From Epiperipatus broadwayi (lineage: Eukaryota > Animalia > Onychophora), in assembly GCA_028023455.1 (NCBI GenBank), contig JAQFVV010000005.1:8804001-8868000 (forward strand): a stretch of 64,000 nt of DNA, read 5' to 3'. Position numbers and translations under genes: made by a program. The notes under the pieces were generated by a model. The model saw nothing but the letters and a program-made list of their open reading frames with translations. It was not told the origin of the DNA and made no database searches. Each line of letters begins with the position of its first letter. Positions within the stretch are counted from its first letter, which is position 1. Below, one piece after another: positions 1 through 38,580 of the stretch.

Positions 1-1024
1 TGTGAGTAGAAGGTAGTAATAGTCAAGGGATGATTAGATTATTTAGATTAAGTTTGGAGATATTCTTTAACCCTTAAGTATATAGGTATAAGTGTTTGGT
101 TATTATTTTTCCCTGCCTTTATTTATTTTGTATAGTTACTGTTAGATGATTTACACCGATTGTAACAGATAAGTGTTATATAATTTTTTATAATATGTAA
201 AAGATGATTGATTTGTGGCATCACACAAGTTTATAAATAATCTAATAAAATATATTTCATGAATACATTATGTTTACAATATAATCAAACACACATATTC
301 GAAGATATACATATGATTAACATATTAAATAGTAGTCAATTTTGATTTTACTTTAGAAGAGATGTAATTGGTTATCAAGGTGCATAAATAATATTTTTTT
401 TATTATAATTATTTCTTTTGTCTTTTATTTTTTATTTATTTTTTAATAAATATTTTAATGAATTAAAAGTCCAAACGAATTGCTTGACTATTTAAGTTCG
501 ATTCTCCATTTCCACACACACACACACATATAGTTAACATAGCATAGCCCTAAAATATATAGATTTGCCAGTAGAAGTCAATTTATTTAATTTGTCTTGT
601 GGTAATAAATCTCAGTATTACAATGCTAATAATATATTTTACTTTGCTTGGAATAGGTGGTGATTTGGATAAAAAGATACCCAATCCTCATCATTGTCTA
701 TACCATAATAAATGTAATAATTGTCAATTTTGCAACAGTTTTAGTATTGAATAGATGCTCTGAACATACTTAAATTAACCTTATAGTATTATTGTTTATA
801 GATGTGTTTATCATTCTTGTTGGCCTCATATATAAAGACCATATCCTATAATCTCAACTGAGCTAGGCCGTGGAGTGGTTGCAATATAAAATCTTTTAAA
901 TAAGTTTAAATATAATTTATAATTATAAATTTTATTCTATTTTGCATAGAATTGGCACCTGGGCAATTATAAATATAATAAAGTAAATAAGTGAAGGAGA
1001 TGGAGGTTATAGGTGAGGGTTAAA
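1..1024 (+). repeat. 5' LTR (3' part only)
   Basis: Colinear with 7819-8820 apart from scattered substitutions and small indels. AATAAA lies near the end, and similarity stops exactly at GGTTAAA (1024/8820). Confidence 0.85.
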
Positions 1025-1410
1025 GTGACCGCTCAATCGTGGGGCCTGATATACTTAAAATAAAGTGGCGTACAACGTGGACGGCTTGTTATATATATAG
1101 AGACCACAACTGCTAGGGTTAAGTGGCTGTCCCTGTTTAATTAAGTCTCATAGCCTAATATATTTACGGTTAAGTGGTGGCATGCAATGTGGATGGCATG
1201 ATATATGTGGGTTAAGTGGTAAGTCTCATATTCTGTAGAATATTTATCTTTTGTTGGTTTAATTGGTTAAAGTGGCGACCCAAACATTTGAGGCTTCGAT
1301 TAATTAAATCTCACACCCTGTAGACTGCCTATCTTGTTGTTGGCTCAACCATTGGGGTTTATATTAATTAAATACCAGACCTTGTAAAATGTCTATGTTT
1401 TTGGTGGCTT
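1025..1410 (+). repeat. Tandem array of (LTR-end + PBS)-like units, tRNA-Lys-like
   Basis: Repeated GGTTAA(A)G-TGG junctions: TGACCGCTCAATCGTGGGGC (1026), TGGCGTACAACGTGG (1066), TGGCATGCAATGTGG (1178), TGGCGACCCAAACATTTGAGGC (1273), plus weaker units at 1124, 1217 and 1341. Compare the tRNA-Lys(CTT) PBS TGGCGCCCAACGTGGGGC. Confidence 0.65.
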
Positions 1411-2214
1411 ATGTTTTAATGTCTCCAGGATTATCTAAACCTAGGTTCATTAATTAATTTTGTTGGTTAAATATCATAAGCTATATGAGTAAAACAGTAT
1501 TGTTAATCAAAATATTTATTTAAAAGAATAAGATAGTTTATATATATATAAAATAATTATATGTGTAAGCTTGTACTATCTCAGTGTATATATATATACT
1601 ATACATTTGATTCTATGTATTTTACTTATAGAGGTAATTTTTATAAGATTAAGGAAGGGTGAATAATAGGTTATATTATTTCTCCTTTAGTATGTTCAGT
1701 TTATATTAGTTTTATGGAAGAGGAAATTATTATTAAAAAGAATTTTTATATGTTAAGTTATTTGTCAGATATGTTAATGAATGTTTATTTGTAGTTGAGA
1801 GTGATAAATTGAAGGAATTTGTAAATGAGTTTAATTGTTTTGATCCTTCTATAAGATATGTGTTAGAAGGAGGGGGTTAGATTTTGGTAAGTTAAAATTT
1901 TTAGATCTTTTGGTGATTAGAAATATAGAAACTAATTGTTTATTGTGCAGTCATTTAGTTAAAAGTAAAGAATTAAGATCTATAATTAAACCTGATAGCT
2001 ATCAGTCTGTATCTCATAAAGTAGCTGCTTTAAGGAATTATTGTCATAGGAATATTAAATTAAATAATTCTAGTGGGGTAGCTTTGTTTCAGAAATATCA
2101 ATTTTATAAAGATTATTTGAGTGTTGGATACTCTGATAAATTTGTTAAAAGTATTTTATTTAATAGTAATATTTGTAAGATGTAAAGGTTAAAGAAAAAT
2201 ATGATTTTATTTCT

Positions 2215-2685
2215 TTGCCATTTAAATTGTCTTCTTATAAAATTGTGTGTAGAAATAGTAAATTGTTTGGAAATAAGAAAATTGCTTGGAAAAGGGGTGT
2301 TACATTGAATAATTTATTAAATAATACAAAAGTTTTTGATAGAAAGACTATTCCTGGTGTGGTATATTTTATTCCTTGTTTATTTTGTAAGAAGGTTTAC
2401 ATAGGTCAGAGTAGTTTGAGTTTAAATGAAAGAATAAAGGTTCATAAAAGTAGAGTTAAAAATAGATATCTTAGTTCTGCTTTGTATGTCCATGAAAAAG
2501 ATACAGGCCACACTATTGATTTTGATGAAGCTAAGGTTGTCTTCTTTGAGAGAAATGAAATCAAAAGAAGAATTAAAGAGTCTTTATTATTGAAAATTTA
2601 TTATTCTGAAGCAATTAACTTATTTAAGAGTTCTTTTAATATTAAGGGTGGATGGGAAGTGAATGGATTTGTGGGTAGTTTTTAA
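2215..2685 (+). pseudogene. PLE GIY-YIG endonuclease domain (fragment of disrupted pol ORF)
   Basis: GVVYFIP / VYIGQS / SALYVHEKDTGH motifs. The upstream RT part is broken by stops and frameshifts. Confidence 0.85.
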
Positions 2686-2721
2686 TAATATATATAATGT
2701 GTGGTTTTTTTGTAGTTCTTT

Positions 2722-2765
2722 ACACTTGAGAAGTCTGCTTGTAGCAGTGAAACCTTAGGTTGTGT
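2722..2765 (+). ncRNA. Type I hammerhead ribozyme-like motif (U3-A8 variant)
   Basis: ACAC TTGAGAA GT CTGC TTGTA GCAG T GAAA CC TTA GG TT GTGT. Stem I is ACAC/GTGT, stem II is CTGC/GCAG, stem III is ACC/GGT, the core is UUGAGAA...GAAA and the site is GUU. Located in the PLE 3' UTR. Confidence 0.7.
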
Positions 2766-3160
2766 TTTAATATTATTTTTATGCTGGTCTGGTTTAATTT
2801 TAGATTTGGGGTAGTTTTGATTTTATATTGACTAGTTTAGCTTTATGCTTGTAATGTTTGTACATTTGTTAATATGTGTTCGTGACAATAAGGAGAAAGA
2901 AAGTTAAAGTGTTAGAAAGGTAGTAAGAGTAAAATGGAACTATGGGTAAATGGAGCATTAACTAAGGTTTGAAATAAGCAAATTGGAGTTTGAAATAAGC
3001 CAATACCTGAAAGATGTGTAATAGATATATGAATGTCAGATGTATAGTTTAAAAAAAAAACTTTTTTTTTTAGGTGAAATAAATAAGTACAGCCATGAGA
3101 CAGCTTAATTTCAATTATAAAGCTATATAAATATCACAACTTATAGTAAATGTTGATAAC

Positions 3161-3198
<38 letters not shown>

Positions 3199-4350
3199 TG
3201 CTTGTCAATTAAATATATATATATATATTGCTTGTCAATTAAATATAGTACTGATGCTAGATAAATATAGAATCATTGATAGTATTAAATCATAAAGTGT
3301 TAATATTGTTCATATTTGGAACACTTCTGTTATAGAAAGTCTATAATTTTGAAGGTTAGATAGAATACTTGATTGTTGGAGTTTTGTTGGTTGTATTGCA
3401 AATTTTGGTGATGGATGGAGAATTTTTGTTATTGTCTTAGGTATATGGTGTATTCATGTCACTGGTGACTGATTGTTCTCATTCACTGCTCCAACCCAAA
3501 TTATGATATCAGTTGTTAATTATCATGAAACAGTTAACAGTAGTCCTGCCATGATTTTGCCTCTAAGACTCCAGAGAGAGCAAGGCAATATTTTATAAAT
3601 AGCCCCTAAGACTTGGATGTAAGCAGGGCATTGTGATAGTGTTTGTAGTAGAATATTATGGGTTGTGGTAGCTTAGAGTGGTTAAAGTGAGATGATCATC
3701 AGAGTGTTCATGGAGCATTGTATGTTTTAAGAGCAGTGATGGAGTTCTTCTATCCATCTCAAAATTGTGAACTGCTGATAATTATTTTGGCTGTCAGTAT
3801 CTGTTGGATCTTTAGAAGAATGGATAAATATATAACTTGAATATATAGCTCATTTGTAACAGCCTATTTTCTATATTCTTATGCAAAGGTTGGCATTTAC
3901 CATATTTAAGTAAAAAATTGTATATCAGTTGTCATAGTGAATGCTTGTCATCATTAATTTTATTTTGGTTATGATTTTTTTTTGTTATAAATGCTGGTTA
4001 TAATATTTGAATGCACCCAATACAGCATAAAGATAAATGAATATGTTTAAATTATTTTGGTCTTTTATCAGTTGTTGAATTGGTGGTTTGCAATATAACT
4101 ATAGTGGATCATATAAAATTTAATTTATAATTCCAGCTGTGTTTAGATTAATGTTATCTAGTTAAAACTTAATGTCTTCTTGCCTATGTGTGTGTGGAAA
4201 ATCGAACATTATATGGGAAAATCAAATTGTGGAAATTTTATGTCATTTTAGATAGTGGTGGTGAATTTGAATTGTTGATTTGGTGGAAGTTGGAGCTGGT
4301 AAACCTTGTTTTCTTAAATAGTATTAATAAATTTTTAAAGAGATTATAAA

Positions 4351-5981
4351 ATGGAAGAGTTTAGTTTATACGATAGTTTGGGTGGGTCTCAAGAGACATC
4401 ATCTCCAGACATTGTTGCAATGTCCCCTGATCTTGAATCAGGAAATGAAGCTATAGATATGTCATATGGAGAGTCTAGTAAGATGAGAGATATTATCTCT
4501 AAAACCACAGATGATGAGATGCCAATGTGGGCCAAATCGTTTTTTGCAGGACTAAAAGAACTAAAGTCTGGTCAAGTAGAATTAAAATTAGAATTAAGAG
4601 AACTAAAGTCAGGACAGACAGAATTGAAATCAGAACTAAAAGAAATAAAATTGAATCAAGATAAATCAGAGGAAAGGATGGCAGAAATAAAATTAGAAGT
4701 TTCAGAAATAAGGTCAGAAATGGTAGAAATAAAAGATAGTATAGTTAGGCAGATGAAAGTTGTGGAGGAGAAAGTAAAAAGTCAGAAATCAGAGTAGCAA
4801 TAGAAATAAAATTGAGTCAAAAGAAATCAGAGGAGATGATAGTTGAAATAAAGTCAGAAATGTCAGAGATAAAATTAGAAATGAAACTAGAGACAAAGCT
4901 AGAAGCAAGGTTAGAAATACCCAAAATGAAGCTAGAAATGCAAGAGAATATTAATGACCAAGTTATGCAGATTAATAAGAATGTTAGTTTAGCCAGTGAT
5001 GAAATAGATGTATACAAAGAACTTAGAGAAATAGTTAATCAGGATTCAAAATTAGAGAAAATAGAAGATATAGACATGCTTAAAGAGTTCAAGAAGAATC
5101 TTGATAAACAGAAAGAAGTTGATAAATTAATGAAGAAAGAAATAATTTCCTTAGACATGAAATATCTAGAAATTTTGGAAAATGAATTGCTAAAGGTTAC
5201 TGATATTACAGGTAATAAATTTAAAAATAAAAATGAAGACATAATTCCAAAATATGTTCTTGATTATTTAGAACATAAGGTGAAGGCGAATGTTTTCAAA
5301 AAAATAGTTTATGGAGATACTAAACATGTAATATGTATTATGAAATGTTTAATCGAAAGTGTTAGTCATGCTAGAGAAGTCGGTAAAGTGAAAATAAAAT
5401 GTAAAATTAAGAATACAGAAAAGTTTGATTTAAATTTTCTTAGAAAAGTCATTAATCCAGAAAGAGATTTAGGCAAAGCCAAAGTAAAGTGTAAATGTAA
5501 AAGTAAGAAGAAAACTAAAGTAGATTTTATGAGAGAGGTAATTAATCACAATAAACATATGAAGAAAATTAAAGTAAAGTTCAAAGAGATGAGGATAGAG
5601 AAGGTTAAGATAAGTTATCTTAATAAAGGTGTAGATTATTTAAGAGATATTGGGAAGGCAAAAGTCAAATTTAAATTAATAAATGAAAAGATAGTTGATT
5701 TAAATCTTAGTAGAAAGATTGTTGATGAAGAAAAAGAAGTTGGAAAGGCTAAGATCAAACTCAAAGGAATAAAGGAAGAATTATTTAATATAAATCATCT
5801 TAAAAAAGTGAAGAATAAAGTAAGATATATTAAAAAGATTAGAGTTAAATCTAGTAAAGTGAAAATGAAATCTTGTAGGAAAAAACTTGTTAGAAGAAAG
5901 GAAATAAAGAATAATCAAGCAAGGTTTAAAGTAACCTATAATGCTCGCAGTTTGATTCCATATCCTGCCAGACATGATTAA
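4351..5981 (+). CDS. Gag-like coiled-coil protein with C-terminal 30-aa Lys-rich repeats (split by one frameshift near 4780)
   Basis: ORFs 4351-4797 and 4812-5981 join by a -1 shift in the A-run GTAAAAAGT. The N-terminus has heptad E/K/I/L repeats. Six units with exact 90-bp spacing start at 5382, 5472, 5562, 5652, 5742 and 5832. The ORF lies between the PBS array and the PPT. No CCHC knuckle is seen. Confidence 0.6.
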
Positions 5982-6201
5982 TAAAATACATATTGTTCAA
6001 TATAGAATTTTATTATTATTATTTTTTACTTATTTAATGTTGTTAAAGTATAATATAAACATGTGTTTATAAAAGCATTAGATGTTTTTATTGTTTTATG
6101 TTTGTTCAACAAACAATGTTCTAATTGAGGAATGATCTTATTGTAAAATTTAATGTATTATTAATATTGATTGTTGTTTATCCAATTCATTTTTCTTTCA
6201 T

Positions 6202-6213
6202 AAGGGGGAAGGA
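6202..6213 (+). promoter_or_regulatory. Polypurine tract
   Basis: AAGGGGGAAGGA immediately before TGTAAC (6215). Confidence 0.8.
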
Positions 6214-6214
6214 T

Positions 6215-8820
6215 TGTAACCTTCCATGTTGGCACCAGAAAGAAATGTGAGAAGGTCACATTTGTGCTAACAAAGGCTGAAAGTAATTAGTTGAGAAAAA
6301 TGAATCGTGATATAATCTAATATTTAAAATTGAGTATTTAGGAAAACTAAACTTAAATTGTGATGTAATTTGCTAGTTAAAATTAGCATTTTAACAAAAT
6401 TAAAATTTTAAATGGGTATAGTGATTTGTGGAGTTTTGGACTATATGTTTAGTGGTAGATGTTTGTGTATAGTAGAGGATTTACATGTCATAATAGGCAG
6501 ATGCATAAATATATTATTAATTAGAATTTTCTTTTCTATATTTTATTTATGAGTTACTGATTATATATTGTCTTAGAATCTTATGTTTTAAAAATGATAA
6601 AGATTGTTTGTAATAGTAAATAACATTTCTAAAATTAATAATTAGTATTTAATATTTTTTTTTTACTATGTTAATTATATTCAAACATTTTATTGTTAAA
6701 ATTTTTATAAATAATATTTCTGGCAAGCTTCCAAAGTTGATTGTCATAGAAACACAGAGGGCGTGAGTAGAGAAAGACATAGAGTTTAAAACTTGAAAGT
6801 AAAAAAAAAAGCTCCGAGGAAGAAGATAAAAAAAACTTAAAGGAATCAATAACTCTCTAAGAGTATTATATAAGAAACATCGCAAGGATTCTAAGAATAC
6901 ACCTATGAAGAATTTTTTTGTTATTATACTACTGGAAAAATATAGAATGAGGAAATAAACAACCCCCCAGAGGGATACCAGCCTTCAAATTTCTGCCAAA
7001 GCAATGGTCCATTTTCACCACTTCAAAATGCCTGGAGGATATGTAAGCTAAATTATTATGATTTATTTTAAAATATTACTAAAGCTGATTAATGTTAAAA
7101 TGGCAAAATTGTGTAAAATAAAGCTAGCTCAAATTTTTTCATTAGACGCTAAAACCAAACGCTTAATACTAAATTCTAATCATCTTCTATCAATCTTCTG
7201 CAAATTAAAATTTAAAATAAAAAAATTTATCTACTTAATTTTATACCAAGAAGATAATTTTCTACTGTATAACTTTGCTATTCGCGTATATATAATGAAA
7301 TAATGTCAATGCATGCAAATATCATTTTTAACACCCCTCACAGAATTCTAGGATAAAAAAAAACCCTTATCATTCTTAACAAATTATTCTTTAACAATGG
7401 ATAGACATTTGTTTTTGTTATAATTTACCGTTGTTTTTAAAACTAATATGTATGTTTATTTCATCTTTCAATTTTTAAAAAAAAACTTAACATGTAATAA
7501 TGGGATATTGACAAATAATTTTTTTTTTTGATTACAATAGATGTATAAACAATTTTTTTGTTGTTGTTTTGTGTTCTTTTAAAAAAAACAAAACAATGTA
7601 ATTTCATTATCATTAGAGTATGATAATTTATTATTTTGTATGATTTAGAAATTATATTATAGGTGATTCTAGATATTCAGATGTGTGCGTGATGCTATAG
7701 ATTATTATTTTAAAGATGTCGTATTTATTATGCAATTTAGTTAATGAGGTATATTTAAAGAAAATAAAGAATTAAAACCTTATCTGTTATAAGTTCAGTA
7801 TATAGGAAGTATATTGAATGTGAGTAGAAGGTAGAAATAGTCAAGGGATGATTAGATTATTTAGATTAAGTTTGGAGATATTCTTTAACCCTTAAGTATA
7901 AAGGTATAAGTGTTTGGTTATTATTTTTCCCTGCCTTTATTTATTTTGTATAGTTACTGTTAGATGATTTACACCGATTGTAACAGATAAGTGTTATATA
8001 ATTTTTTATAATATATAAAAGATGATTGATTTGTGGCATCATACAAGTTTATAAATAATCTAATAAAATATATTTCATGAATACATTATGTTTACAATAT
8101 AATCAAACGCACATATTCGAAGATATATATATATATGATTAACATATTAAATAGTAGTCAATTTTGATTTTACTTTAGAAGAGATGTAATTGGTTATCAA
8201 GGTGCATAAATAATATTTTTTTTATATTATAATTATTTCTTTTGTCTTTTTCTTTTTTTAATAAATATTTTAATGAATTAAAAGTCCAAATGAATTGCTT
8301 CACTATTTAAGTTCGATTCTCCATTTCCACACACATATAGTTAACATAGCATAGCCCTAAAATATATAGATTTGCCAGTAGAAGTCAATTTATTTAATTT
8401 GTCTAGTGGTAATAAATCTCAGTATTACAATGCTAATAATTTATTTTACTTTGCTTGGAATAGGTGGTGATTTGGATAAAGATACCCAATCCTCATCATT
8501 GTCTATACCATAATAAATGTAATAATTGTCAATTTTGCAACAGTTTTAGTATTGAATAGATGCTCTGAATATACTTAAATTAACCTTATAGTATTATTGT
8601 TTATAGACGTTTTTATCATCCTTGTTGGCCTCATATATAAAGACCATATCCTATAAGAGCTAGGCCATGGAGTGGTTGCAATACAAAACCTTTTAAATAA
8701 GTTTAAATATAATTTATAATTATAAATTTTATTCTATTTTGCATAGAATTGGTGCCTGGGCAATTATAAATATAATAAAGTAAATAAGTGAAGAAGATGG
8801 AGGTTATAGGTGGGGTTAAA
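6215..8820 (+). repeat. 3' LTR (about 2.6 kb)
   Basis: Starts TGTAACC after the PPT and ends GGTTAAA. Its last 1 kb matches 1-1024. The first 1.6 kb cannot be verified because the 5' LTR runs off the window. Confidence 0.65.
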
Positions 8821-8879
8821 ATATATACTCACATAACATTATGTATAGGGTTTAATTATTAAGAAAGTCCATTTTTATG

Positions 8880-9430
8880 TTCCAGGGTTGCAATCATGAA
8901 GTCTGTCCCTTAATTTGTGTCTTTCTCTTTTTAAGTACTTTCATTCATTTTCCTAATGAATGTAAATGGACCTTCATAAGTGTTGCAAAGCTTGTGGAAC
9001 TTGGGACCTTTGTTTCTTTGCAGGGAGTATGGTTGTCTCTAGTATCATCTGGCAACTTTCAATGACTTGGTCATCTTCATGATTCTGATAAGACTTCACA
9101 TGCCTTAGTATACACTTAAGATGAACAAATCCATCGACTTCATTTGTCCATCCAAAGTCGGCTTTACTAATGGGACAATTTTCTTTTGTGAAAAGCCTTT
9201 GAGCATATAGTAACCTTTCTTGGAATCTGCTACTGTGTTCATGGACCTTGTATTTAGAGTAAACATTAAGTTCTGAACATTGGATGCTCACACTAATTTG
9301 CATTGCTCAGTCATCTACTTTACTAATTCCCATACTCTTCATTGGTAGGGTGGAACCAGTGTCATTACATGTTTTTGGGATCACTCCTCCCAACTTAAGA
9401 TTGGTGGAATGATTTTTATTCTGTCTCCAG
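8880..9430 (-). mobile_element. Possible DNA-transposon (THAP/P-like) coding remnant
   Basis: Minus ORF 8974-9303, with an upstream in-frame LKLGGVIPK weakly resembling the THAP AVPT box. No termini were found. Confidence 0.25.
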
Positions 9431-9443
9431 GTACTTGATGAGT

Positions 9444-10395
9444 TCAACTAACAGAAGATTCAGGTTCAAGAGAAGTTTTTGCAGTAAAAGAATACTTAGT
9501 ACTTTGATTGGATTCAAAAATGAAAACAGGTAGGTCCTTTAGATCATTAATATCACTGCTCATACTATCCATCCTACTATTAATATCATAAGTTTTAGTT
9601 TCTATACTATCTATATTCTCCTTTACACACTCCATCTTTGTTTCCAAATTACTATTTATTTTGGTCTCCAAATCATCAATATCAGTTTTGGCTACCATAA
9701 TAGCCTTCATATCCTCTATCTTAGTGGATTCCTGGGCTTGGTGAACCTCTTTAATTTTATGATCAATTCAAGTGGTAATACTTTCCATAAATCCAATGAA
9801 TCACTCGTGACACTGTGTTCCTTACATCTATCTCTATTCTCATTTCTTCTATGTCTTGCTTCAATTCTATATTACTGTTATGCATTTTATTCATCTCTGA
9901 AGATAACTGCTCCATATCTGTGGACAATTTCAGTTCAAGGGCACTAATTCTCTTCTCAACCTTCTCATCCAATTTGTCAATATCTTTCTTCAGATCCTCT
10001 CTTAAAACATATGCTTCCTTTCCATTCAGTTTCTGTTTTGTCATCAATCTGACTCCTCATGTTGCTCATATCAGCCTTGATTGTATCTATCTGACCACTC
10101 ATGTAATCCATCCGATCACTTAATCAGCATTTATGTTAGTCATATTAACTTTGGTTGCCATATTAGTTTTCATGGCATCTATTTGATCCTTTATCATTTT
10201 AAGCATTTGCATCATGGCTCCCTTATCTTTTGTAGCCTGTGTTAGTCCAATTCTCGGTGATTGTGCAGACTGTTCATTTGACTTTCCTTGAATATGAGAT
10301 ATCATTTGCCTTTCCTCTTGCATTGACAAAGAATGCTCAGCTCCAACCATTGACTCCCTGGGTACATCTACATCTACAGATCCTTCTTGTTCCAC
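9444..10395 (-). pseudogene. Gag-like coiled-coil N-terminal region of a second LTR element (frameshifted into three ORFs)
   Basis: Consecutive minus ORFs 10120-10395, 9763-10047 and 9444-9710 are all heptad-like (e.g. IDDLETKINSNLETKMECVKENIDSIETK). They lie downstream of a PBS array and LTR end at 11.0-11.36 kb. Confidence 0.6.
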
Positions 10396-10982
10396 ATCAA
10401 GATCACCCTTAATTTCATTGTCAGTAACATCCTGTGGCTTTACATTTAATATCTTTATTCATACTTGCTAAATACCTCCCACTTCTAAGCAACATACAAA
10501 ATAAACTAATATTTTTTCTTTGAAATATTTACTCTATGAACACAAAGTTTTTTCTTTTCTATATAATACTTATAACATGTCATAGGATCTACCAATGTGT
10601 GTCATCATGTGTGAATATTTTGGTTACCTTAAGTATTTCATATCTCATTGGTATTAATGCCAGATTTATATATTTTGCCCTTTATCTGACTCACTTGCCT
10701 ACTCTTATTAGATTCTTGATCATCTATTTAGTTTGGTCTCTATTTGTCAATTCATACTTTCACTCAGAGTTATTTGGACTTATTGTTGACTGACTAAGTT
10801 AATTATATCATTAAGTTGCTACACCATTTAATCCATAGGGTTATATAATATATAGTCTATTAAGTGACTAACTAAAATATGATGTATCAGGTTATACTGA
10901 AATTATGGACAATTTCTCATAAATTTAATTTATGTCACACTAAAAATATATGGTAAAATATGATAGACTTAACTCTTTAAAA

Positions 10983-11365
10983 CCTATCACATTGTGTACC
11001 AAAATGTAATAGTCATAACTATTCACATGTGGTGAACGTAAGTACTCGAGCTTACCACGTTGTATGCCAAAAATGTAACAGACAATAAACTAGAATGAAT
11101 TTAATAATTGGCTAATACAAATACAACATGATACTCAACTTACATTAAGTCTATATGTGCTATTGCACCTATTATACAGGCCTCACTGTTGATGGTGCCA
11201 AAAATGTAACAGTATGTAATTTGTACCTGTGATGAACTTAAATATTCATGCCCAAAAGGTTGGGTACCAAAATATGTAATGGTACGTAGTCTGCCAAAAT
11301 ATGTAATGGACCGAATAATGTAATGTAGTGACTCTACCTACTGTTCTTGCCCAAATATGTAATGG
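10983..11365 (-). repeat. Second tandem array of (LTR-end + PBS)-like units
   Basis: Minus strand reads TTACA-(A)T3-5-TGG six times: TGGGCAAGAACAG (11353), TGGCAGACTACG (11296), TGGTACCCAACC (11269), TGGCACCATCAACAGTGAGGC (11200), TGGCATACAACGTGG (11069), TGGTACACAATGTG (11001). Confidence 0.7.
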
Positions 11366-11801
11366 ACCGAGTACAATAAGATGGTATATTCAGTCTTCAC
11401 AACTTACAGGTCCTATTACGTCTCGGAGTTCAAACTCAGTGAAGAAATTTGCCTTTAACTCTACTCAAGGATGGATTTAAACAGGATGGCAATAATGTGA
11501 CCTTTATATAGGTCCTTAATAGCTTTTACTAATGAATATATTAAAAATGTGTACACATGTATAATAGATATTCTGGTGAGTGAAGTATGAATGATGCTTG
11601 ATAATCTAGAGACCAGAGAAACACAGATTTTAACTTCAAACAACAAATATTTATTAACAAATCTGGGTTAAATTTATAATATTTATAACTTAATAAGAAT
11701 ATATACATGAATATAATAAAGTATTGATTTGTCTTTACTATATGACTAATTGTGATTTAAGTCTTAAACATATCAATCAGAATAAAAATTATAAAATTAC
11801 A
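11358..11801 (-). repeat. Probable 5' LTR of the second LTR element (distal boundary uncertain)
   Basis: TGTAAT at 11358 adjoins the outermost PBS-like unit, and an ATTACA terminus lies at 11796-11801. No partner LTR is present in the window. Confidence 0.4.
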
Positions 11802-13067
11802 ATCCACAATAAAGTATCTATTATTTTGAAAATCACACTATATTATTAGATGCTTAATGTTTACTTTGATTATGTCCTCTGTCTATGGATTGCTAATTTA
11901 TATTTTATAGATAGAATTCATTCATAAGACTATTAATCATACAAACAGTAAAATGTACTCATATATAATTATTAGTAAGTCTATTTAATATTTAATTTTA
12001 TATATTAAATGTCTAATTAAGTGTATATGTTTAAAATCTTACCTTTTGTCTTTTAAGTCAGTGTCCAATCTAATGCATCCAATTATTTTAAGACTTTATT
12101 TATGAACATATAAAATTTATATATGTATACTTTGAGTTGTCTATTTATATTTTTCTCCTTCTATAAAAATTTAAGCCAAATGGGTTCTTTACATTTTAAG
12201 ATTTAGAGAAAAATAATGTTTTCTGCAAATGAGTAAAAGAGTGAGAAAAATCGTAACTCAACTCCCAGTATACATTAAAAAAAAAAAAATACAAAAAATA
12301 TAAAACTATTTAAGAGCATCAAAATTAGATATCTTGGACTTTTTTAAAAACAAAGGGTTAACATTTGTAAGAGTGGCTTCAGTGTTTTTTTTATTTATCA
12401 GATGGTGTCTTCTTTTTATTCACGCATGTTGGATGATTTTAAAATTCAACCATTTAACAATTCCCATGATGAAATTGAACTCTTTGGCTCTTGATTTTGT
12501 AGCCATTGCCTTTCCAATTCTATCTTCAAATCATTCCACGCTGATGTAGACATTAAGCATATCAATAGTTATTATACTCCATCACCATCTGATGACACTA
12601 AGAAGGTACAAAGATCCTGTAACAATTAATTTAGCAAGATTGGATCCTTATATTATATATATATGCAAATAAGTAGTTAAATATAAGTTTTTTCCAAAGT
12701 TTGCATTATAATATAAAAAGAAATGCTGTTTACATGCAGTATATATATATATAAAATATATAAAAGATATGTGATAATAGATTTTGTTTCAAAAGAAATA
12801 CAAATTAGTATTTTAAAATTCTATTTCATTATTAGTTTGCTTTTTTTTTTTTTTTTATAATAATTATATTTTTGTGGTTGATAAGCAAATATAAATCTCA
12901 CAGAATCTATTCGAACAAACGAAAGTTCATAACTTAAATAATGTCTCTTTTCTTTTTAAAATATTTTGCACCTTACCAAATAAATGCAATTTAAGATATT
13001 AACAGTTTTCTTTTAAAATGAAATAGAATCATGATAATTAATATAATAATAATAATTAAAAATATTT

Positions 13068-19000: not shown

Positions 19001-19389
19001 AAAAATTTGATTTTGTTTATTGCAAGACATATGTTAAGATCCATATCAACAATTTATAAATTAAAATCTTTGGTTTCTACATCAGCCATTTATGAACTAA
19101 ATTTTTTTATTCATTTCTAAGTGTAGTTATGGATCATTGTGTTATCGAAGATTTTGTCAAATGTATTGATTCCTTTCTAAAGTTTATTATAGTGCTGATT
19201 TGTTTCACTTTGCTACTGTAAATCCTAAGCAGTAAAACCAATTATGATTTATTATGATGTCATGTTTTTTTATTGAATCAATCAAAGACTGAAGAAACAT
19301 TTTATGTCATTGTTACTACAGAATTGACAATAATATAGATCCAACTTTAAAGTCTATTTTTTAATATTAAATTAATTTGTTTGCTAGTA

Positions 19390-20010
19390 AAAGACAACTA
19401 TAAAAAAAACTTTGAAAATACATGAAAAAATCTTGTAAGAAAAAAAAAAGTACTAATGCAGAGTAATTATAAAACTGCAGTAAGAAATAACTTTAAATTA
19501 CATGAATGGTCTTATATAGAAGATTATAAATTTTAATAGCAGTTATGTGTGATTTCACTACTGATATAAAATGATGTTCCTACAACATTGAAATTTCTGG
19601 GATTACAAAACTGCTATGAATGTTAATTTAAAAGTATATAAAAAATTTCATGCAGGAGAAAACTTTTATCAGTACAGATTATCCTATTACAAAACTACTA
19701 CCAAATGTAATTTAAAAGTAGATAAATAATAAGAAAAATTTCTAGATTGTAGTTGATTTATTTGACTTAACTGGTATGCATGTTAGTTTAAAAATCAAAA
19801 ACACATAGAAGCTCAATCTGTTTCATATATTTTTTTTATTGAAGAAGTACAAATATATAGAATTTACTCTGAATAAATGAATAAAATAAAACAATGAGAG
19901 AAGTGTATAAATAGTGTTACAGACAAAAGTGTTTTGGAAAGTCATGAAATAAACCAATTCAATAATCATAAAACTTTTGAAATTCTTATATAATCCACAT
20001 GAATTGTTTT
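19390..20010 (+). pseudogene. Heavily decayed C2H2 zinc-finger paralog (copy 1)
   Basis: Relic fingers NYKTAVRNNFKLHE and DYKTAMNVNLKVYKKFHAGENFYQ. 19897-20000 aligns with the end of the 36.9-kb gene (GAGAAGT.TATAAAT...TTTGGAAAGTCATGAA...CACATGAA). Confidence 0.7.
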
Positions 20011-20229: not shown

Positions 20230-21630
20230 ATGAAATGTAGATAAGTATTGTGAAATGAGAAATAGAACAATCATTAGATGAAGAAGATATGTCATTAGCA
20301 CTAAAGTGAAATGTAGATCAGTCATCAGCTAAATAAAAAGTAAATCAGTCACCAACTGAAATGAAAAATAGATCAGACAGTAGCTGAAGAGAATGGATGG
20401 GGCATCAGCTGAATTGAATAGATCAATTCATTAGCTATAATGAAAAGTGGATCAATCATCAGTCATAAATAGAAATAAGATGTACATCATTCACAGCTAA
20501 AGTTAGGAATAGAATCACCAGGTGAATGGAGGAATAGATTAGTCATCAATTGGAGATAGAAATAGATCAGTTGTAGTGAGAAAGACATAAATAATAAGTG
20601 AGAAATAGATCAGTCATCTGAAATGAGAAATAAGTCAGTCATTTGGTGAATTCAGAAGTCATCAGCCAAACAAAGGTATCCATCAATCTTCAGTTGAAGT
20701 GAGATCAGTTATCAAGTGAAGTGAGAAGTAGAACAATCATCAGCTGAAATAAGGAATAGATCAGTTATCAACTGAGGATAAAAATAGATCAAAAATTTAC
20801 TGAAGTGAGGAATAGATCAATCATTTGAAGAGGGAAATAGATCAGTCATCAGCTAAAGTGAGGAGTAGATCAATTATCAGCTATAGTGAGAAGTAGATCA
20901 GCCATCAGGTGAATTGACAGTACATTAGTTATCAGCTAAAGTGAAAAGTATATCAATCATCATTTGTATGGAGAAGTAAATCAGTCAACCATTAAATTTA
21001 GAACATCAGTCATAAACTGAAATGAGGAATAGATCAGTAATCAGCTGTAGTGAGAAGTAGATCAACCATTAGCTGTAATGAGAAGTAGATCAGCTTAAGT
21101 GATGAGTCGATCTGTCATCAAATTAAGTGAGTAGATGAATCATCAACTGATATGAAGAGTGAATTAATCATCAGCTATACTGAGAATTTGGTTAATTATC
21201 AAGCAAAATGAGAAATATATAACCTGTAAGTGAGAAATAAATCAGTCATCAGGTTAATCCATCAGCTGATAACTGATTACCTTATTTCAGCTACTGATTG
21301 ATTTAATCATTTTTGCTGATAACTGATCTACATCTAATTTTGGCTGATGATTGATCTACTTTTCACTTGAAATAATGACTGATCTATTTCTCATTTTGAT
21401 GAATGATTTATTTCTTACTTCAATGGCTGACTGATCTACTACTCACTACAGCTAATGACCATACTTCTCACTTCAGCTAATGATTAATTTTATTTCAGCT
21501 GATGATTTACTTCCCATTTCAAGTGATGATTAATCTACTCTTTACTTTGCCAAATAATTTGATCTACTTCTCACTTCATTTGGTGACTGATCTACTTCTC
21601 ATTTAAGGAGATCAGTCATCAGCTGATGTA
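20230..21630. repeat. 28-bp minisatellite with internal inversion (foldback)
   Basis: Consensus AGTGAGAAGTAGATCAGTCATCAGCTGA. Forward units run 20230-21260, inverted units 21270-21600 around the palindrome ATCAGCTGAT (21261-70), then forward again at ~21607-21627. Confidence 0.9.
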
Positions 21631-30789: not shown

Positions 30790-31050
30790 TTCAGTCATCA
30801 GCTGAAGTCAGAGATAAATCAATCAACAGAAGAGAGAATTAGATCAGTCATCAGCTGAAGTAAGAACTAGATCACTTAGTAACTGAAATGAGTTCAGTTA
30901 TCAGCTGAAATGAAAAGTAGCTAAGTCATCAACAGAAGTGAGAAATCAATGAGCCATTCATTGAAATGAGAAGTAGTATAGTTAGTTTTTCTGTTGAAGG
31001 GTGTAGATCAATTATTGACTGAAATAAGGAATAGATTACTTATCAACTCA
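30790..31050 (+). repeat. 28-bp minisatellite (same family as 20230-21630)
   Basis: About 9 units of AGATCAGTCATCAGCTGAAGTGAGAA-type sequence. Confidence 0.85.
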
Positions 31051-33469
31051 AGTGTTAAGAAATAAATTAGAGACTTGTTAATTAATTGGATACTATATTA
31101 AATAAAATTCACTTTATTTAATAACAATGCTGCTTTAATTAATCATATAAAAATTTATATTTAATCAGTTTTGCTGTAAAATGTTTTGTAATTAAGATAA
31201 ATATATACATAGACCTATATAGAGTAGGAATTGTGAATTTTGTCTTTAATAAAATTTGAACATCCATTTTGAAATTGATTTAATAACTATTGAATAGTTT
31301 TTATTATAAATCATAATGACTGTTGGCATAAACTAAAAATATAATATTGTATTCACATACATGATAAAATTCTTTTCAAAAAACATTTGAACAATATCCA
31401 CATTTCATACTAGATGAGATTTGCACCTATTGTAAATAATTTACCTAATAATTTACCAGTCTCAATTTTTGTCAGTTTTTCACTAATTTAAATAATGCCC
31501 TACTTAGATCTTCATCATTTTCAATAAAAGAAGAATTATGTTTTTTTGTAGATAACTTCAAATTGGCTCCTGATTCAAAGTTCTTTTTTCTAGAATAAAT
31601 GCTGAATTCACAATAGACTTAGTATTTCCTATAAGTCAGTTCCTGTAATGAGCACAAGAGCTGAACAATGGGTTATAATTTTGTTCACATATCAGAATTC
31701 TTAATATATAAAAATAAATATTTTATTTGTATTCTGTAAAAGATTTATTAATTTTTCATTTGCTTTCTCATTTATTGATCCCTGCTAAAAATAATATTTC
31801 AAAGCAAATCTATGATCACTACAGTGCTGGAAAGTATATTTCTTAAAAGCTTACTGTTGCACATAAATAATGTGATAAACAATATGTATTGGACTATACA
31901 TTCAATGCTTATAAATATCAATTAAATGATTTTCTAAAATGATCATATTTTGTTAAGAATCTTCAAGAATAAATGGACTGATATATTTTTTTATCACTAT
32001 CTCTTTTTATCATTTATATCTTCAATTATTATATTACAAAATATTTTGTTATATACCTACTGAGGTACATCACCTTATCTTATTTAAAAGTATGATCTCG
32101 TCATTGATATCAAACAATTTCTTTCTCTTTGAACTTCAGCTCTTTATATAAACCTACTTAGAAAACAGATATTAACCCAATCATCAGACAAGTTTTTGCC
32201 TTTATCTTTTGATGAGGGAATGTAATTATTCCCAAAACTTTTTTTTTTTTTAAATTTGATTTGGAAGTGAAAAGATTACTACTATCAAATACAATTAGTA
32301 AATGTAGAATAGAAAATTGTGATGTTTTTTTAAAAAATTACATAAACTTTTTGAATTTTTGTATTAGGCATTCCAGTATTTACATCTTTTTTTGATATAT
32401 TACATTTTATTTCTTTAGGATCATTTCATTTGTATTTATATTATGTTATCATTGCATTAAAGTTTACTTTTTTATAGTAGCAACAATATTATATTTTTTA
32501 CATTTATTTATGAATTACATCAGAGTTAGCATCTTTTCTGAATATTGTACTTTATACTGTATTATTGATTTTGGTTAAGTATTTAAATTTCATGTAAGCC
32601 TTTATGCAATATATAATGACTAATCAGGAAAATTTTTCTCATTTATAGAATGAATAACTTAAATAGATTAGTATAAGTAACAAACATTGTAGGATCAAAT
32701 ATATTTATAATTCATTAAAAATAAATGTATGCATTATTTCTTTACAGGATTGTGATCATATTCCCTTTTAATATTACATTATTAAAACTCTCCATCTATG
32801 TTTAATTCTATGATTAATTTCATCCATGTTTCATCTGTATTATTACTCTGACAATTGTATATATAGTTGTTAGCATCTAAATCTTGATTATTAATTTATT
32901 TTATTCTATGAAAAAGCATTGAACATTATTTTAATCTTTTTAGTATATATCTTTAGTTCTAAATTGATGTTTATTTTTAGAAGTATCTACTATATATATA
33001 TATATTAACTTGTAACAATTATTAAACAATAAAATTGTTAATTTGTCATATTACTGAAACATGGAAATTATTTAAGGAATGCATAACAGATACAAATAAA
33101 TCTAATCTTGAAATCATTTTTAAAAAAATCATGATTAGTTTTCTGACAATGATTTTATTAGTAATTTGATTAAAAGGAATCATGACATTTTTTTTGCTTG
33201 GTAGAATAATAAATTAAATGTGAAATTTCATAATAAATATAGAAATCTGAGGGTTTAAAAATTATTAATGGATTAAAACTGTAATGAAGATACAGACATT
33301 CATTAATAATAGTCACCCTTAATCTTTTTTGATGCACCAAAAGCAACAAATAATGTGAGAAATGGTATCACAGTCCAGTTCGCTCTCTTACATAATAATG
33401 ATATATTAAACAAATGGAATAAGTATTTTGATTATGTTATGCATTGAGATGATATCTTTTAATGATATA

Positions 33470-36867: not shown

Positions 36868-38110
36868 TTGTATGAGAAAATGATCTCTACTAAAATACAT
36901 GAAAAAATTCTTGCCATAGCAAGACCATTTCAGTGCAGTTTATGTGGCTACCAAACAACTACAAAAGGTAATTTTAAGATACATCTAAAGTCTCATCCAG
37001 AAGAAAAACCTTTCCATTGCAGTTTTTGTGATTATAAGACTGCAGTAAAAAGTAGATTAAAACCACATGAATTAATTCATACTAAAGAAAAACCTTTTCA
37101 CTGTAACTTATGTGATTATAGAACTGCTTTCAAAAGTAGATTGAAACAGCATGAACTAGTTCATACAGGAGAAAAACCTTATCACTGTACTTTTTTGTGA
37201 TTATAGGACTGCTTTCAAAGGTAGTTTAAAAATACATGAATTAATTCATAAAAAAGAAATTCCTTTTCAATGCAATTTGTGTGATTTCAAAACTGCTTTC
37301 AAAAGTAGATTGAAACAGCATGAGTTGAGTCACACAGGAGAAAAACCTTTCCAGTGTAATTTTTGTGATTATAAGACTGCTTTTAAAAGTAGCTTAAAAG
37401 TACATGAAAGATCTCACAGTGGAGAAAAATCTTTTCAATGAAGTTTGTGCAATTACAAGACTAATAGAAAAGATAGTTTAACATATCATAAATTCACTCA
37501 TTTTGGTATAAAACGTTTTAAGTGCCTTCTGTGTGATTACAGAAGTACTACAAAATATAGCTTAAAAATACATGAATTAACTCATACAGACTATTGCAAA
37601 ACAACTACAGAAACTGATTTGAAAAAGCATGAAATATTTCATATAGGAAAAAAATCTTTTCAGTGCAGTTTATGTGATTTTCAGACAGCTTCAAAAAGTA
37701 ATTTAAAAATGCATGTGAAATTCACTCATTTAGGTGAAAAAAAAAATTTCTACTGCAGTTTATGCACCTACAAGACTGCTGCAAAACATAGTCTAAAAGT
37801 ACATCAACTAACTCATACAAGACTAAAATCTTTTAACTGTAGGTTAATTAATGACAAAACTAATGCAAAGAGTAGTTTAAAACTACAAGAAAATATTCAC
37901 ACAATAAAACAGATTATTTGTAATAATATTTGTTTAAAGAATAATAATTGTGTAGAACATTTTTCTTTAATGCAAGAAAAGTCATTGGGAGAAGTATATA
38001 AATGTTGTTTATGTGATTATAACATTACCGAAAAAAATCTTTTGGAAAGTCATGAAGTGAATCATTTTACTGATTATGAAACTCTTAAGATTCTCATAAG
38101 ATTCACATGA
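36868..38110 (+). pseudogene. Tandem C2H2 zinc-finger gene (about 11 recognisable + 2 degenerate fingers); frameshift and nonsense codon
   Basis: Repeated F.C.(L/F)CDYKT..K..LK.H...H units with TGEKPF-type linkers. An extra T in T6 at 37191-96 shifts the frame in finger 4. TGA at 37439-41 replaces the first Cys of finger 7. Confidence 0.85.
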
Positions 38111-38344: not shown

Positions 38345-38580
38345 TATATTAAGCATCAATAGAAATGGATCGATCATTATTTGAAATGAGAAGTCAATCA
38401 TTAAGTGAGGTTTGCTGTAGATTAGTTATCAGCTGAAATGAGAATTAAATTAACTGTAGTAAGAAATAAAACAGTAATAAGCTGTATTGAGAAATATATC
38501 AGTCATCAATTGAGGGTAGAATTAAATCCATCATGAAGACTGAAATCAGAAGAAGCTGAAGGGAGAAATTGATTAGTCTC
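38345..38580 (+). repeat. Degenerate 28-bp minisatellite (same family)
   Basis: AGATTAGTTATCAGCTGAAATGAGAA-like units downstream of the zinc-finger stop. Confidence 0.75.

What the first reader, a model, noticed from the sequence alone, without database searches (positions are those of the whole stretch)
1025..1410. Array of 6-8 LTR-end/PBS junctions behind one LTR
Seen: right after the LTR end (GGTTAAA, 1024) the junction GGTTAA(A)G+TGG recurs every ~50-100 bp, and several copies resemble the tRNA-Lys(CTT) PBS TGGCGCCCAACGTGGGGC. Many differences are CG>CA/TG changes (TGGCATGCAATGTGG). Established: an LTR element normally has one PBS, and 3'-CCA tRNA fragments can repress LTR elements through the PBS. 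Inference: the array could provide redundant or alternative priming sites, or act as a tRNA-fragment decoy, in an element that must borrow RT. It could also be a neutral product of template slippage.
Basis: partly seen in the sequence, partly recalled or inferred. Interest (0 to 1): 0.75.

Follow-up and report, generated by a model that had tools for sequence, protein, structure and literature searches.

The report
Stacked relic primer sites behind LTR
A retrovirus-like element with no polymerase gene carries about eight decayed copies of its "repeat end plus tRNA-Lys primer site" junction; all its relatives share this fossil stack, which most likely records copying slips rather than a new function.

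Summary
GTTAA(A)GTG occurs five times in 1019-1275 and three times in the rest of the window on both strands. The only good matches to that site in the window lie in this array and in a second one at 10983-11365 (minus strand).

The array is not private. All 27 aligned relatives carry it, at 365-519 bp with 2-8 junction motifs. Primer-site-like stretches are about 100 times commoner than in shuffled arrays, and 52 of 57 lie within 150 nt of the LTR end. They are no better conserved than the spacers, and those with CpG are worse. No unit in this copy is close to fully complementary to the tRNA. The units are copies of one another.

At least five other LTR families here have such stacks, each with its own LTR-end stub.

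Best reading: relics of primer-binding modules, born by template switching during reverse transcription and reshuffled by unequal exchange, with no function shown. Alternative priming or a tRNA-fragment decoy is not supported but not excluded.

The scan found the same phenomenon earlier on other DNA of this genome (s1-187187, s1-085571).

The parts
1..1024 (+). 3' part of the 5' LTR; the LTR continues upstream of the window. It ends ...GGGTTAAA.
   Evidence: Direct repeat with 7819-8821, 97.5% identical. The 650 nt upstream of the window match 7176-7817 at 94%. Relatives stay homologous at least 650-1057 nt upstream.
1017..1060 (+). Unit 1: LTR end GGGTTAAA, a one-base spacer G, then the primer-site-like stretch TGACCGCTCAATCGTGGGGC (1026-1045), then an AT-rich spacer.
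   Evidence: It is 4 edits from the tRNA-Lys complement. It abuts the point where the 3' LTR ends, so it marks the site used at the last copying.
1061..1115 (+). Unit 2: stub TAAAG plus TGGCGTACAACGTGGACGGC (1066-1085) plus spacer.
   Evidence: 13 of 18 gapless matches to the primer site, the best in the window. It is a paralogue of unit 4 (z 8.1).
1116..1167 (+). Unit 3: stub GGGTTAAG plus TGGCTG, with the rest of the primer site deleted, plus a leader box (TTAATTAAGTCTCATAGCC).
   Evidence: Related to units 5 and 6 (z 4.4-4.5). The box aligns to positions 29-57 of the tRNA complement, p about 0.03.
1168..1208 (+). Unit 4: stub GGTTAAG plus TGG plus TGGCATGCAATGTGGATGGC (1178-1197). This is unit 2 with all its CpGs decayed.
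   Evidence: The decay is shared by all 26 aligned relatives (97% column agreement), so it predates their spread.
1209..1264 (+). Unit 5: stub GGGTTAAG plus TGG, primer site deleted, plus a leader box (TAAGTCTCATATTCTGTAGA).
   Evidence: Related to unit 6 (z 8.3) and unit 3.
1265..1340 (+). Unit 6: stub GGTTAAAG plus TGGCGACCCAAACATTTGAGGC (1273-1294; the primer site with small insertions) plus TTCGA plus the leader box ATCTCACACCCTGTAGA.
   Evidence: (0 of 500 shuffles reach its score). A related family (L093) has the same box after a perfect primer site.
1341..1401 (+). Unit 7: TGGCTCAACCATTGGGGT plus a leader box. It has no recognisable stub.
   Evidence: It is the closest paralogue of unit 6 (z 11.9).
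1402..1475 (+). Unit 8, doubtful: TGGTGGCTTATG and a last TTGGTTAAAT. Too decayed to test.
   Evidence: No significant similarity to the other units; included only because of its position.
1622..2860 (+). Nested insertion private to this copy: a fragment of a Penelope-like element with a weak GIY-YIG match. It is not part of the array.
   Evidence: Relatives join 1621 directly to 2861. GIY-YIG match E = 0.00088, below Pfam's cut-off.
4351..5981 (+). Two coiled-coil, lysine-rich ORFs (148 and 389 aa); the only sizeable coding capacity inside the element.
   Evidence: No Pfam family and no polymerase domains. The protein atlas gave no usable hit.
6202..6213 (+). Polypurine tract AAGGGGGAAGGA, two bases before TGTAACC.
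   Evidence: Read directly.
6215..8821 (+). Probable full 3' LTR (about 2.6 kb), running from TGTAACC to GGTTAAA.
   Evidence: The end is fixed by the break in homology at 8821. The start is inferred from the polypurine tract, the TG, and 6 of 7 inverted termini. Homology with relatives reaches at least 6762.
10983..11365 (-). Independent second stack in another LTR element. Its units carry a different stub (ATTACA/GTTACA plus T-run plus TGG) and the same tRNA-Lys site.
   Evidence: It is also family-wide, with at least 19 full-length copies.

Best explanation
The array is a stack of relic primer-binding modules in the leader of an old, non-autonomous LTR retrotransposon with long LTRs. Each module holds the last 7-9 bases of the LTR, the complement of the 3' end of tRNA-Lys(CTT), and, in the longer units, a leader box that resembles the complement of the tRNA body.

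Shown: the module next to the LTR marks the site used at the last copying, because the 3' LTR ends exactly there.

Inferred: modules arise during reverse transcription when a short tRNA-primed cDNA stub (tRNA plus a few bases of U5), or a plus-strand strong-stop DNA that ran on into the tRNA, is joined in by template switching.

Shown by unit-to-unit similarity and by whole-unit gains and losses between copies: once two modules exist, misaligned strand transfer and unequal exchange between units add and remove them.

Shown: modules that are not used are no longer refreshed from the tRNA, and they decay by CpG deamination and small indels. On present evidence the stack does nothing; it is a by-product.
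For: 1. Identity of the units: the host tRNA-Lys(CTT) gene gives the exact 18-mer. In 128 kb, good matches to it occur only in the two arrays.

2. The array is family-wide and variable. All 27 copies have it, at 365-519 bp with 2-8 junction motifs, and whole-unit indels lie mostly near the LTR.

3. There is a decay gradient. Of 57 primer-site-like hits, 52 lie within 150 nt of the LTR end; shuffled arrays give 0.02 hits each.

4. There is no selective signal. Primer-site parts agree across copies at 0.81-0.97 and spacers at 0.92-0.98; the CpG-bearing parts are the least conserved. The RNA folds no better than shuffles, z 0.38.

5. The units are paralogues of each other (z up to 11.9) and share private indels such as CAATCG.

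6. One copy points to a reverse-transcription origin. L002 has one canonical site (1 edit) where relatives have two decayed units, as expected if strong-stop DNA landed on the second unit, deleting one unit and resetting the other.

7. The same architecture recurs with family-specific stubs of 8-21 nt in at least five other families.

8. This genome holds many LTR ends joined to long or complete CCA-ended tRNA-Lys copies, so reading on into the primer is common here.

9. The 3' LTR ends exactly at unit 1.
Against: The birth mechanism is inferred, not shown; no intermediate was observed.

Most units share indels and so were copied from each other. De novo events templated on the tRNA must therefore be rare, and DNA-level duplication alone could explain most of the array.

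The unit next to the LTR is non-canonical (TGACC... instead of TGGC...) in 25 of 27 copies, with shared changes. This is odd if that site is rewritten from the tRNA at each cycle, and I cannot explain it.

In the related family L093 the perfect site is the second unit, which hints that inner units can be used.

The census of other families rests on only 50 sampled sites. Copies of one family are not independent.
Confidence: 0.55

Rival explanations
1. The stack provides working alternative or back-up priming sites. tRNA-Lys can start minus-strand synthesis at any sufficiently intact unit. Use of an inner unit moves the LTR boundary and rescues elements whose first site has decayed.
For: L093 has its perfect site as the second of three units. 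L002 and L029 have canonical sites while their neighbours are decayed. Engineered retroviral vectors with two primer sites use both; the paper is cited, was not held, and its details are from memory.
Against: In this copy no unit is within 3 edits of the tRNA complement. The inner units are not conserved above the spacers. The last 120 nt of this LTR show no unit-like sequence, z 0-1.9. Every decayed inner unit carries changes shared by all copies, so none was refreshed during the family's spread.
Confidence: 0.18
2. The array is an ordinary minisatellite made only at the DNA level, by replication slippage and unequal crossing-over of a segment that happened to span the LTR/primer-site junction. 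Reverse transcription played no part.
For: The units are paralogues with shared indels and a possible two-unit higher-order period. Unit numbers vary as in any tandem repeat. Tandem repeats in the leaders of LTR elements are known (PMC3286476).
Against: The same junction is the repeated segment in at least six families with unrelated LTR ends, which is not expected of random slippage. In L002 a contraction coincides with a reset to the tRNA sequence. The genome is rich in aberrant LTR-end/tRNA joints that can only come from reverse transcription.
Confidence: 0.15
3. The units act as a sponge or decoy for 3' CCA tRNA-Lys fragments, or for the tRNA itself. They would protect the true priming site from silencing guided by tRNA fragments, or raise primer capture.
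For: 3' tRNA fragments repress mouse LTR elements through the primer site (abstract of PMC12853362). There are many sites per RNA.
Against: Targeting needs near-perfect 18-22 nt pairing. Here the best unit has 13 of 18 gapless matches or 4 edits. There is no conservation of the 18-mers. Whether this animal has such fragments is unknown.
Confidence: 0.05
4. The repeats are binding sites for a host or element protein (an enhancer, insulator or packaging signal), and the likeness to a primer site is incidental history.
For: Leader repeats of Drosophila gypsy act as an insulator (cited in PMC3286476). The longer units keep a shared box.
Against: No part of the units is conserved above its surroundings. 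There is no excess RNA structure. The motif shared by all units is exactly the LTR end plus TGG, which points to reverse transcription.
Confidence: 0.05

Closest known systems
Canonical tRNA-Lys primer site of long-LTR Ty3/gypsy elements (for example the Osvaldo lineage)
   Same: A long LTR followed after 0-3 bases by the complement of the 3' end of tRNA-Lys. Osvaldo-like Culex elements have 1-2 kb LTRs and Lys sites (table in PMC3286476).
   Different: Those elements have one site. Here about eight junction copies follow each other. The element has no pol, so its lineage could not be placed.
Culex quinquefasciatus cqgypsy_1 (atypical primer-site region)
   Same: Reverse-transcribed, CCA-ended tRNA sequence sits next to the LTR and is flanked by a direct duplication of the LTR end (26 nt there, 7-21 nt here) (PMC3286476).
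   Different: cqgypsy_1 has a single head-to-head tRNA-Lys/tRNA-Glu dimer in one element, and its authors read it as a transposition-like insertion. Here the units form head-to-tail stacks of 2-8 in many families and are decayed.
Tandem repeats in the 5' UTR of LTR retrotransposons (Mag-like Culex elements, gypsy insulator)
   Same: Family-wide repeats in the leader, just inside the 5' LTR (PMC3286476).
   Different: Those repeats are not reported to contain the LTR end or the primer site.
Retroviral vectors engineered with two primer-binding sites (Voronin and Pathak 2004)
   Same: More than one tRNA site on one genomic RNA. That work shows what happens if inner sites are used.
   Different: An artificial construct with two perfect sites. 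The paper was not held, so its details are from memory.
Second tRNA-binding boxes of Gypsy and Ty3
   Same: Extra stretches complementary to the tRNA body (PMC1635307). Here a leader box resembling positions 22-48 of the tRNA complement follows the primer site in many families.
   Different: In Gypsy the second site lies at the 3' end of the genome and is not a repeat of the junction.
Non-autonomous LTR elements (LARD, TRIM, TR-GAG)
   Same: LTRs, primer site and polypurine tract are kept and pol is absent (TR-GAG: PMC4350172, abstract).
   Different: The only ORFs here are coiled-coil and lysine-rich with no Gag match, so TR-GAG membership is not shown.

Membership tests
LTR retrotransposon | Two long direct terminal repeats | tested here: met
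   1-1024 against 7819-8821 is 97.5% identical. The repeat extends at least 650 nt further upstream.
LTR retrotransposon | Site complementary to the 3' end of a host tRNA right after the 5' LTR | tested here: met
   Host tRNA-Lys(CTT) gene found. Unit 1 starts 2 nt after the LTR end but is 4 edits from a perfect match. Relative L002 is 1 edit away.
LTR retrotransposon | Polypurine tract just before the 3' LTR | tested here: met
   AAGGGGGAAGGA at 6202-6213, then TGTAACC. The LTR start is inferred from this and is not confirmed by a 5' flank.
LTR retrotransposon | TG...CA inverted termini | tested here: not met
   The termini are TGTAACC and GGTTAAA: 6 of 7 inverted, ending AA rather than CA. 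Sister families end GTTACA.
LTR retrotransposon | Target-site duplication | not testable with these tools
Autonomous LTR retrotransposon | Reverse transcriptase, integrase and protease genes | tested here: not met
   No such Pfam match in any ORF of 40 aa or more between the LTRs.
Functional multiple primer sites (alternative priming) | Two or more units nearly fully complementary to the tRNA 3' end | tested here: not met
   The best units have 13 of 18 gapless matches or 4 edits.
Functional multiple primer sites (alternative priming) | Primer-site parts conserved above spacers across copies | tested here: not met
   0.81-0.97 for primer-site parts against 0.92-0.98 for spacers.
Functional multiple primer sites (alternative priming) | LTR boundary falls at different units, or units lie inside the LTR end | tested here: inconclusive
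   No unit-like sequence in the last 120 nt of this LTR. The 3' LTRs of the other copies could not be fetched.
3' tRNA-fragment target or decoy | Near-perfect 18-22 nt complementarity to the CCA-ended tRNA 3' end | tested here: not met
3' tRNA-fragment target or decoy | Such fragments exist in the host and bind the units | not testable with these tools
   No small-RNA data are available.
Leader tandem repeat of an LTR element | Head-to-tail related units shared by the family | tested here: met
   Pairwise z up to 11.9. All 27 copies carry the array. Tandem Repeats Finder reported nothing in 1017-1475 because the units are too unlike.
cqgypsy_1-type tRNA insertion | CCA-ended tRNA copy flanked by a duplicated LTR end | tested here: met
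   Each unit has an LTR-end stub plus TGG plus the tRNA complement. Full-length tRNA copies occur at other loci.
cqgypsy_1-type tRNA insertion | Head-to-head dimer of two different tRNAs | tested here: not met
   All units are head-to-tail and derive from tRNA-Lys.

The most novel reading that the evidence does not exclude
Stacks of primer-binding modules are an adaptive feature of a whole group of tRNA-Lys-primed LTR elements in this animal. They would supply several landing pads for the primer or for strong-stop DNA. The priming site, and with it the LTR boundary, could then move, decayed sites could be bypassed, or silencing tRNA fragments could be soaked up.
Probability: 0.15. Interest if true: 0.75.

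Novelty: new variant of a known kind. Interest (0 to 1): 0.5.

Why it matters
An LTR element is expected to have one primer site. Here whole families carry stacks of junction copies, each with its own LTR-end stub. These stacks are a natural, genome-wide record of how initiation and strand transfer go wrong in vivo: short primed stubs, reading on into the tRNA, and misaligned jumps. Such events are otherwise seen mainly in engineered vectors.

There is also a practical point. Annotation tools that look for a single primer site next to the LTR will misplace LTR ends in such genomes.

If inner units prove usable, the stacks would give a simple route by which LTR boundaries shift and non-autonomous elements survive decay of their primer site.

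Tried and rejected
- Tandem Repeats Finder found no array in 1017-1475. The units are too unlike, so pairwise tests were used instead.
- Rfam found no tRNA-like match in 1-12500. ARAGORN found no tRNA gene in the window.
- The first 22 genome sites matching the tRNA 3' end were all LTR junctions, not genes. A longer pattern was needed to find real genes.
- I first read the sequence upstream of the window as a tandem internal-LTR-internal-LTR arrangement. I dropped this when nearly all relatives proved homologous there and a polypurine tract plus TG turned up at 6202-6215. The LTR is simply about 2.6 kb long.
- I tested whether the LTR end has absorbed units: no signal.
- I tested for excess RNA structure: none.
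- Single units aligned to the tRNA body give only modest support, p 0.004-0.14. The stronger evidence is the leader box across families.
- The protein atlas gave nothing for the 389-aa ORF.
- One literature search was swamped by "phosphate-buffered saline".
- The bacterial promoter scan is irrelevant to an animal element.
The census therefore stops at 50 sites, and the 3' LTRs of other copies were not seen.
- I did not align the units to other host tRNAs, because the host tRNA set could not be fetched.
The consensus line printed automatically was not used.
- The contig is not human (27% G+C).

Full report
**What is there**

The window is AT-rich (27% G+C) and strongly depleted in CpG (observed/expected 0.25), as in a methylated animal genome. 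It lies on contig C5 of a 5.6-Gb assembly and is not human.

A long direct repeat ends ...GGGTTAAA at 1024 and again at 8821, where homology breaks. The last 1 kb of the two copies is 97.5% identical (25 mismatches in 997 aligned bases).

- The 650 nt upstream of the window match 7176-7817 at 94%.
- Nearly all relatives stay homologous over that stretch, one of them for 1057 nt.
- A polypurine tract, AAGGGGGAAGGA, sits at 6202-6213, two bases before TGTAACC.

I therefore take the 3' LTR to be about 6215-8821 (2.6 kb). Its termini are TGTAACC and GGTTAAA: 6 of 7 inverted, ending AA where sister families end GTTACA.

Between the LTRs there is no reverse transcriptase, integrase or protease. There are only two coiled-coil, lysine-rich ORFs at 4351-5981 with no recognisable relatives. 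A 1.24-kb fragment of a Penelope-like element at 1622-2860 is absent from all relatives.

**The observation**

GTTAA(A)GTG starts at 1019, 1118, 1169, 1211 and 1266. Only three more copies occur in the whole window on both strands.

I split 1017-1475 into eight units (see the parts list). Each unit begins with the last 7-9 bases of the LTR plus TGG.
- Units 1, 2, 4, 6 and 7 continue with a recognisable remnant of the primer site.
- Units 3 and 5 have lost most of it.
- Unit 8 is doubtful.

Two genuine tRNA-Lys(CTT) genes of this genome (L056, L058: no encoded CCA, T-run after the gene) end ...CCCCACGTTGGGCG.

Local alignment of this 18-mer to both strands of the window gives hits only in this array (1020, 1060) and in a second array on the minus strand.

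Unit 4 equals unit 2 with its three CpGs turned to TG or CA.

The units are related to one another well beyond shuffled controls: z 11.9 for units 6 and 7, 8.3 for 5 and 6, 8.1 for 2 and 4. Tandem Repeats Finder misses them because they are too unlike.

**Not private to this copy**

A search of the same genome with 850-1500 gave 2509 first-look candidates. Of the fetched loci, 27 (this one included) have both the LTR end and the sequence downstream of the array.
- All 27 carry the array. Its length runs from 365 to 519 bp, with 2-8 junction motifs (median 5).
- The alignment shows gains and losses of whole units, mostly in the half nearest the LTR.
- Stretches within 5 edits of the primer site number 57 in the 27 arrays, against 0.02 per shuffled array. 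Of these, 52 lie within 150 nt of the LTR end.

So the units are real derivatives of the tRNA-Lys site, and the ones farther from the LTR are more decayed.

**No sign of selection on the primer-site parts**

Across the 27 copies the primer-site-like segments agree at 0.81-0.97 per column and the spacers at 0.92-0.98. The least conserved segments are those that still hold CpG. The already decayed unit 4 is as uniform as its flanks, so its decay predates the spread of the family.

In this copy no unit is closer than 4 edits to the tRNA complement. The array RNA folds no better than shuffles (z 0.38).

**Which unit is used**

The 3' LTR ends exactly where unit 1 begins, so the last round of copying started at the site next to the LTR. 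The last 120 nt of the LTR hold no unit-like sequence.

Two relatives are informative.
- L002 has a nearly canonical site (1 edit) directly after the LTR end where other copies have two decayed units. This is what a strong-stop DNA landing on the second unit would give: one unit deleted and the other reset to the tRNA sequence.
- L029, a distant copy, has a site next to the LTR that differs from the canonical one only by three transitions, two of them at CpG.

One thing remains unexplained. In the other 25 copies the first unit is non-canonical (TGACC... for TGGC...) with shared changes. It was therefore inherited rather than rewritten from the tRNA.

**A habit of this genome**

A 15-mer of the tRNA 3' end occurs 1160 times in the genome, against 0 for the reversed control. 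The sites I looked at are LTR/primer-site junctions of many families, not tRNA genes.

Of 50 sampled sites, 9 show the 13-mer "last ten LTR bases plus TGG" again within 800 nt downstream, against 0 in reversed controls. Reading the loci shows clear stacks in at least five further families:
- L031 and L063: four units with a stub of about 20 nt.
- L036, L083 and L088: four units with a 20-nt stub.
- L093.
- L054.
- The element on the minus strand of this window (10983-11365).
- L032 is a looser case, seen only by eye.

Each stack repeats its own LTR end. The second array in the window is also family-wide, with at least 19 full-length copies.

The genome also holds LTR ends joined to long or complete CCA-ended copies of tRNA-Lys, and even LTR-tRNA-LTR mini-elements. 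Reading on into the primer is thus frequent.

In many families the leader just after the primer site resembles positions 22-48 of the tRNA complement: mean alignment score 18.3 against 12.2 for control segments. The longer units of this array carry that same box. L093 shows it after a perfect site.

**How it most likely works**

Shown:
- The units are junction copies.
- They are shared by the family.
- They are copied from one another.
- They decay with distance from the LTR.
- They are not conserved.

Inferred:
- A unit is born when a short tRNA-primed cDNA stub, or a strong-stop DNA that ran on into the tRNA, is joined in by template switching.
- Later, misaligned strand transfers and unequal exchange add and remove units.
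- Only the unit in use can be refreshed from the tRNA, and the rest decay.

I put this at about 0.55. The rivals are alternative priming (0.18), a purely DNA-level minisatellite (0.15), a decoy for tRNA fragments (0.05), and a protein-binding array (0.05).

**What is known**

Four full-text searches found no description of tandem LTR-end/primer-site stacks.

The nearest case is Culex cqgypsy_1. There a CCA-ended tRNA dimer next to the LTR is flanked by a 26-nt duplication of the LTR end (PMC3286476).

Other related cases:
- Gypsy and Ty3 have second tRNA-binding sites of another kind (PMC1635307).
- Vectors with two engineered sites exist; the paper is cited but was not held.
- Repression by tRNA fragments through the primer site is described for mouse (PMC12853362).

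Two earlier follow-ups of this scan describe the same kind of stack on other DNA of this genome (s1-187187, s1-085571). Their readings agree with mine in the main. I tested the claims only on my own loci.

**Verdict**

The finding is real, family-wide, and one case of a genome-wide habit. It is best read as a fossil stack, and I class it as a new variant of a known kind. Interest is moderate.

Noticed in passing
window 10983-11365, minus strand: A second stack of LTR-end/tRNA-Lys junction units in another element (stub ATTACA/GTTACA plus T-run plus TGG). It is family-wide, with at least 19 full-length copies. In about a dozen copies the two halves of the query lie 0.6-1 kb apart at the LTR/array boundary, so the stack may be much longer there.
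   Followed up: partly
window 1622-2860: A fragment of a Penelope-like element nested in this copy only, with a weak GIY-YIG match. A 97% identical copy lies in L030:1-1134.
   Followed up: partly
L053:about 1200-1600 and L055:about 1250-1600 (minus strand of each locus): Mini-elements made of LTR, one complete CCA-ended antisense tRNA-Lys(CTT), and LTR, with almost nothing else between the repeats.
   Followed up: no
L049 and L057, around locus position 1500: Head-to-head (palindromic) joints. In L049 two inverted LTR ends flank a partial tRNA-Lys(CTT) copy. In L057 a tRNA-Lys(CTT) copy is followed by a site that looks like a tRNA-Lys(TTT) primer site (from memory) between inverted copies of another family's LTR end.
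   Followed up: no
L031-L040 and L059-L098, first 60 nt after the primer site: Many LTR families share a leader box (CCAC.ACCCTGAGA-like) co-linear with positions 22-48 of the tRNA-Lys complement. It is either a relic of long read-through into the primer or a second primer-contact site.
   Followed up: partly
L002-L029, first unit after the LTR end: In 25 of 27 copies of the family the unit next to the LTR starts TGACC instead of TGGC, with shared indels. The site in use was thus inherited, not rewritten from the tRNA. Unexplained.
   Followed up: partly
window 4351-5981 (+), 9444-10395 (-), and L093 (ORF seen only downstream of its array): Coiled-coil ORFs with no Pfam family follow the stacks in both window elements and in L093. 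They may be a shared Gag-like or accessory protein of this group.
   Followed up: partly
window 36890-38070 and 19370-20010: Runs of an 84-nt repeat that look like C2H2 zinc-finger arrays. At least some units are degenerate.
   Followed up: no
window 20500-21240, 30800-31060, 38390-38520: A 28-nt tandem repeat (TAGATCAGTCATCAGCTGAAGTGAGAAG-like) recurs at three places, each next to the zinc-finger-like repeats.
   Followed up: no
window 40198-40381 and 57007-57222: Two-copy tandem duplications of 92 nt and 108 nt (93-94% identical).
   Followed up: no
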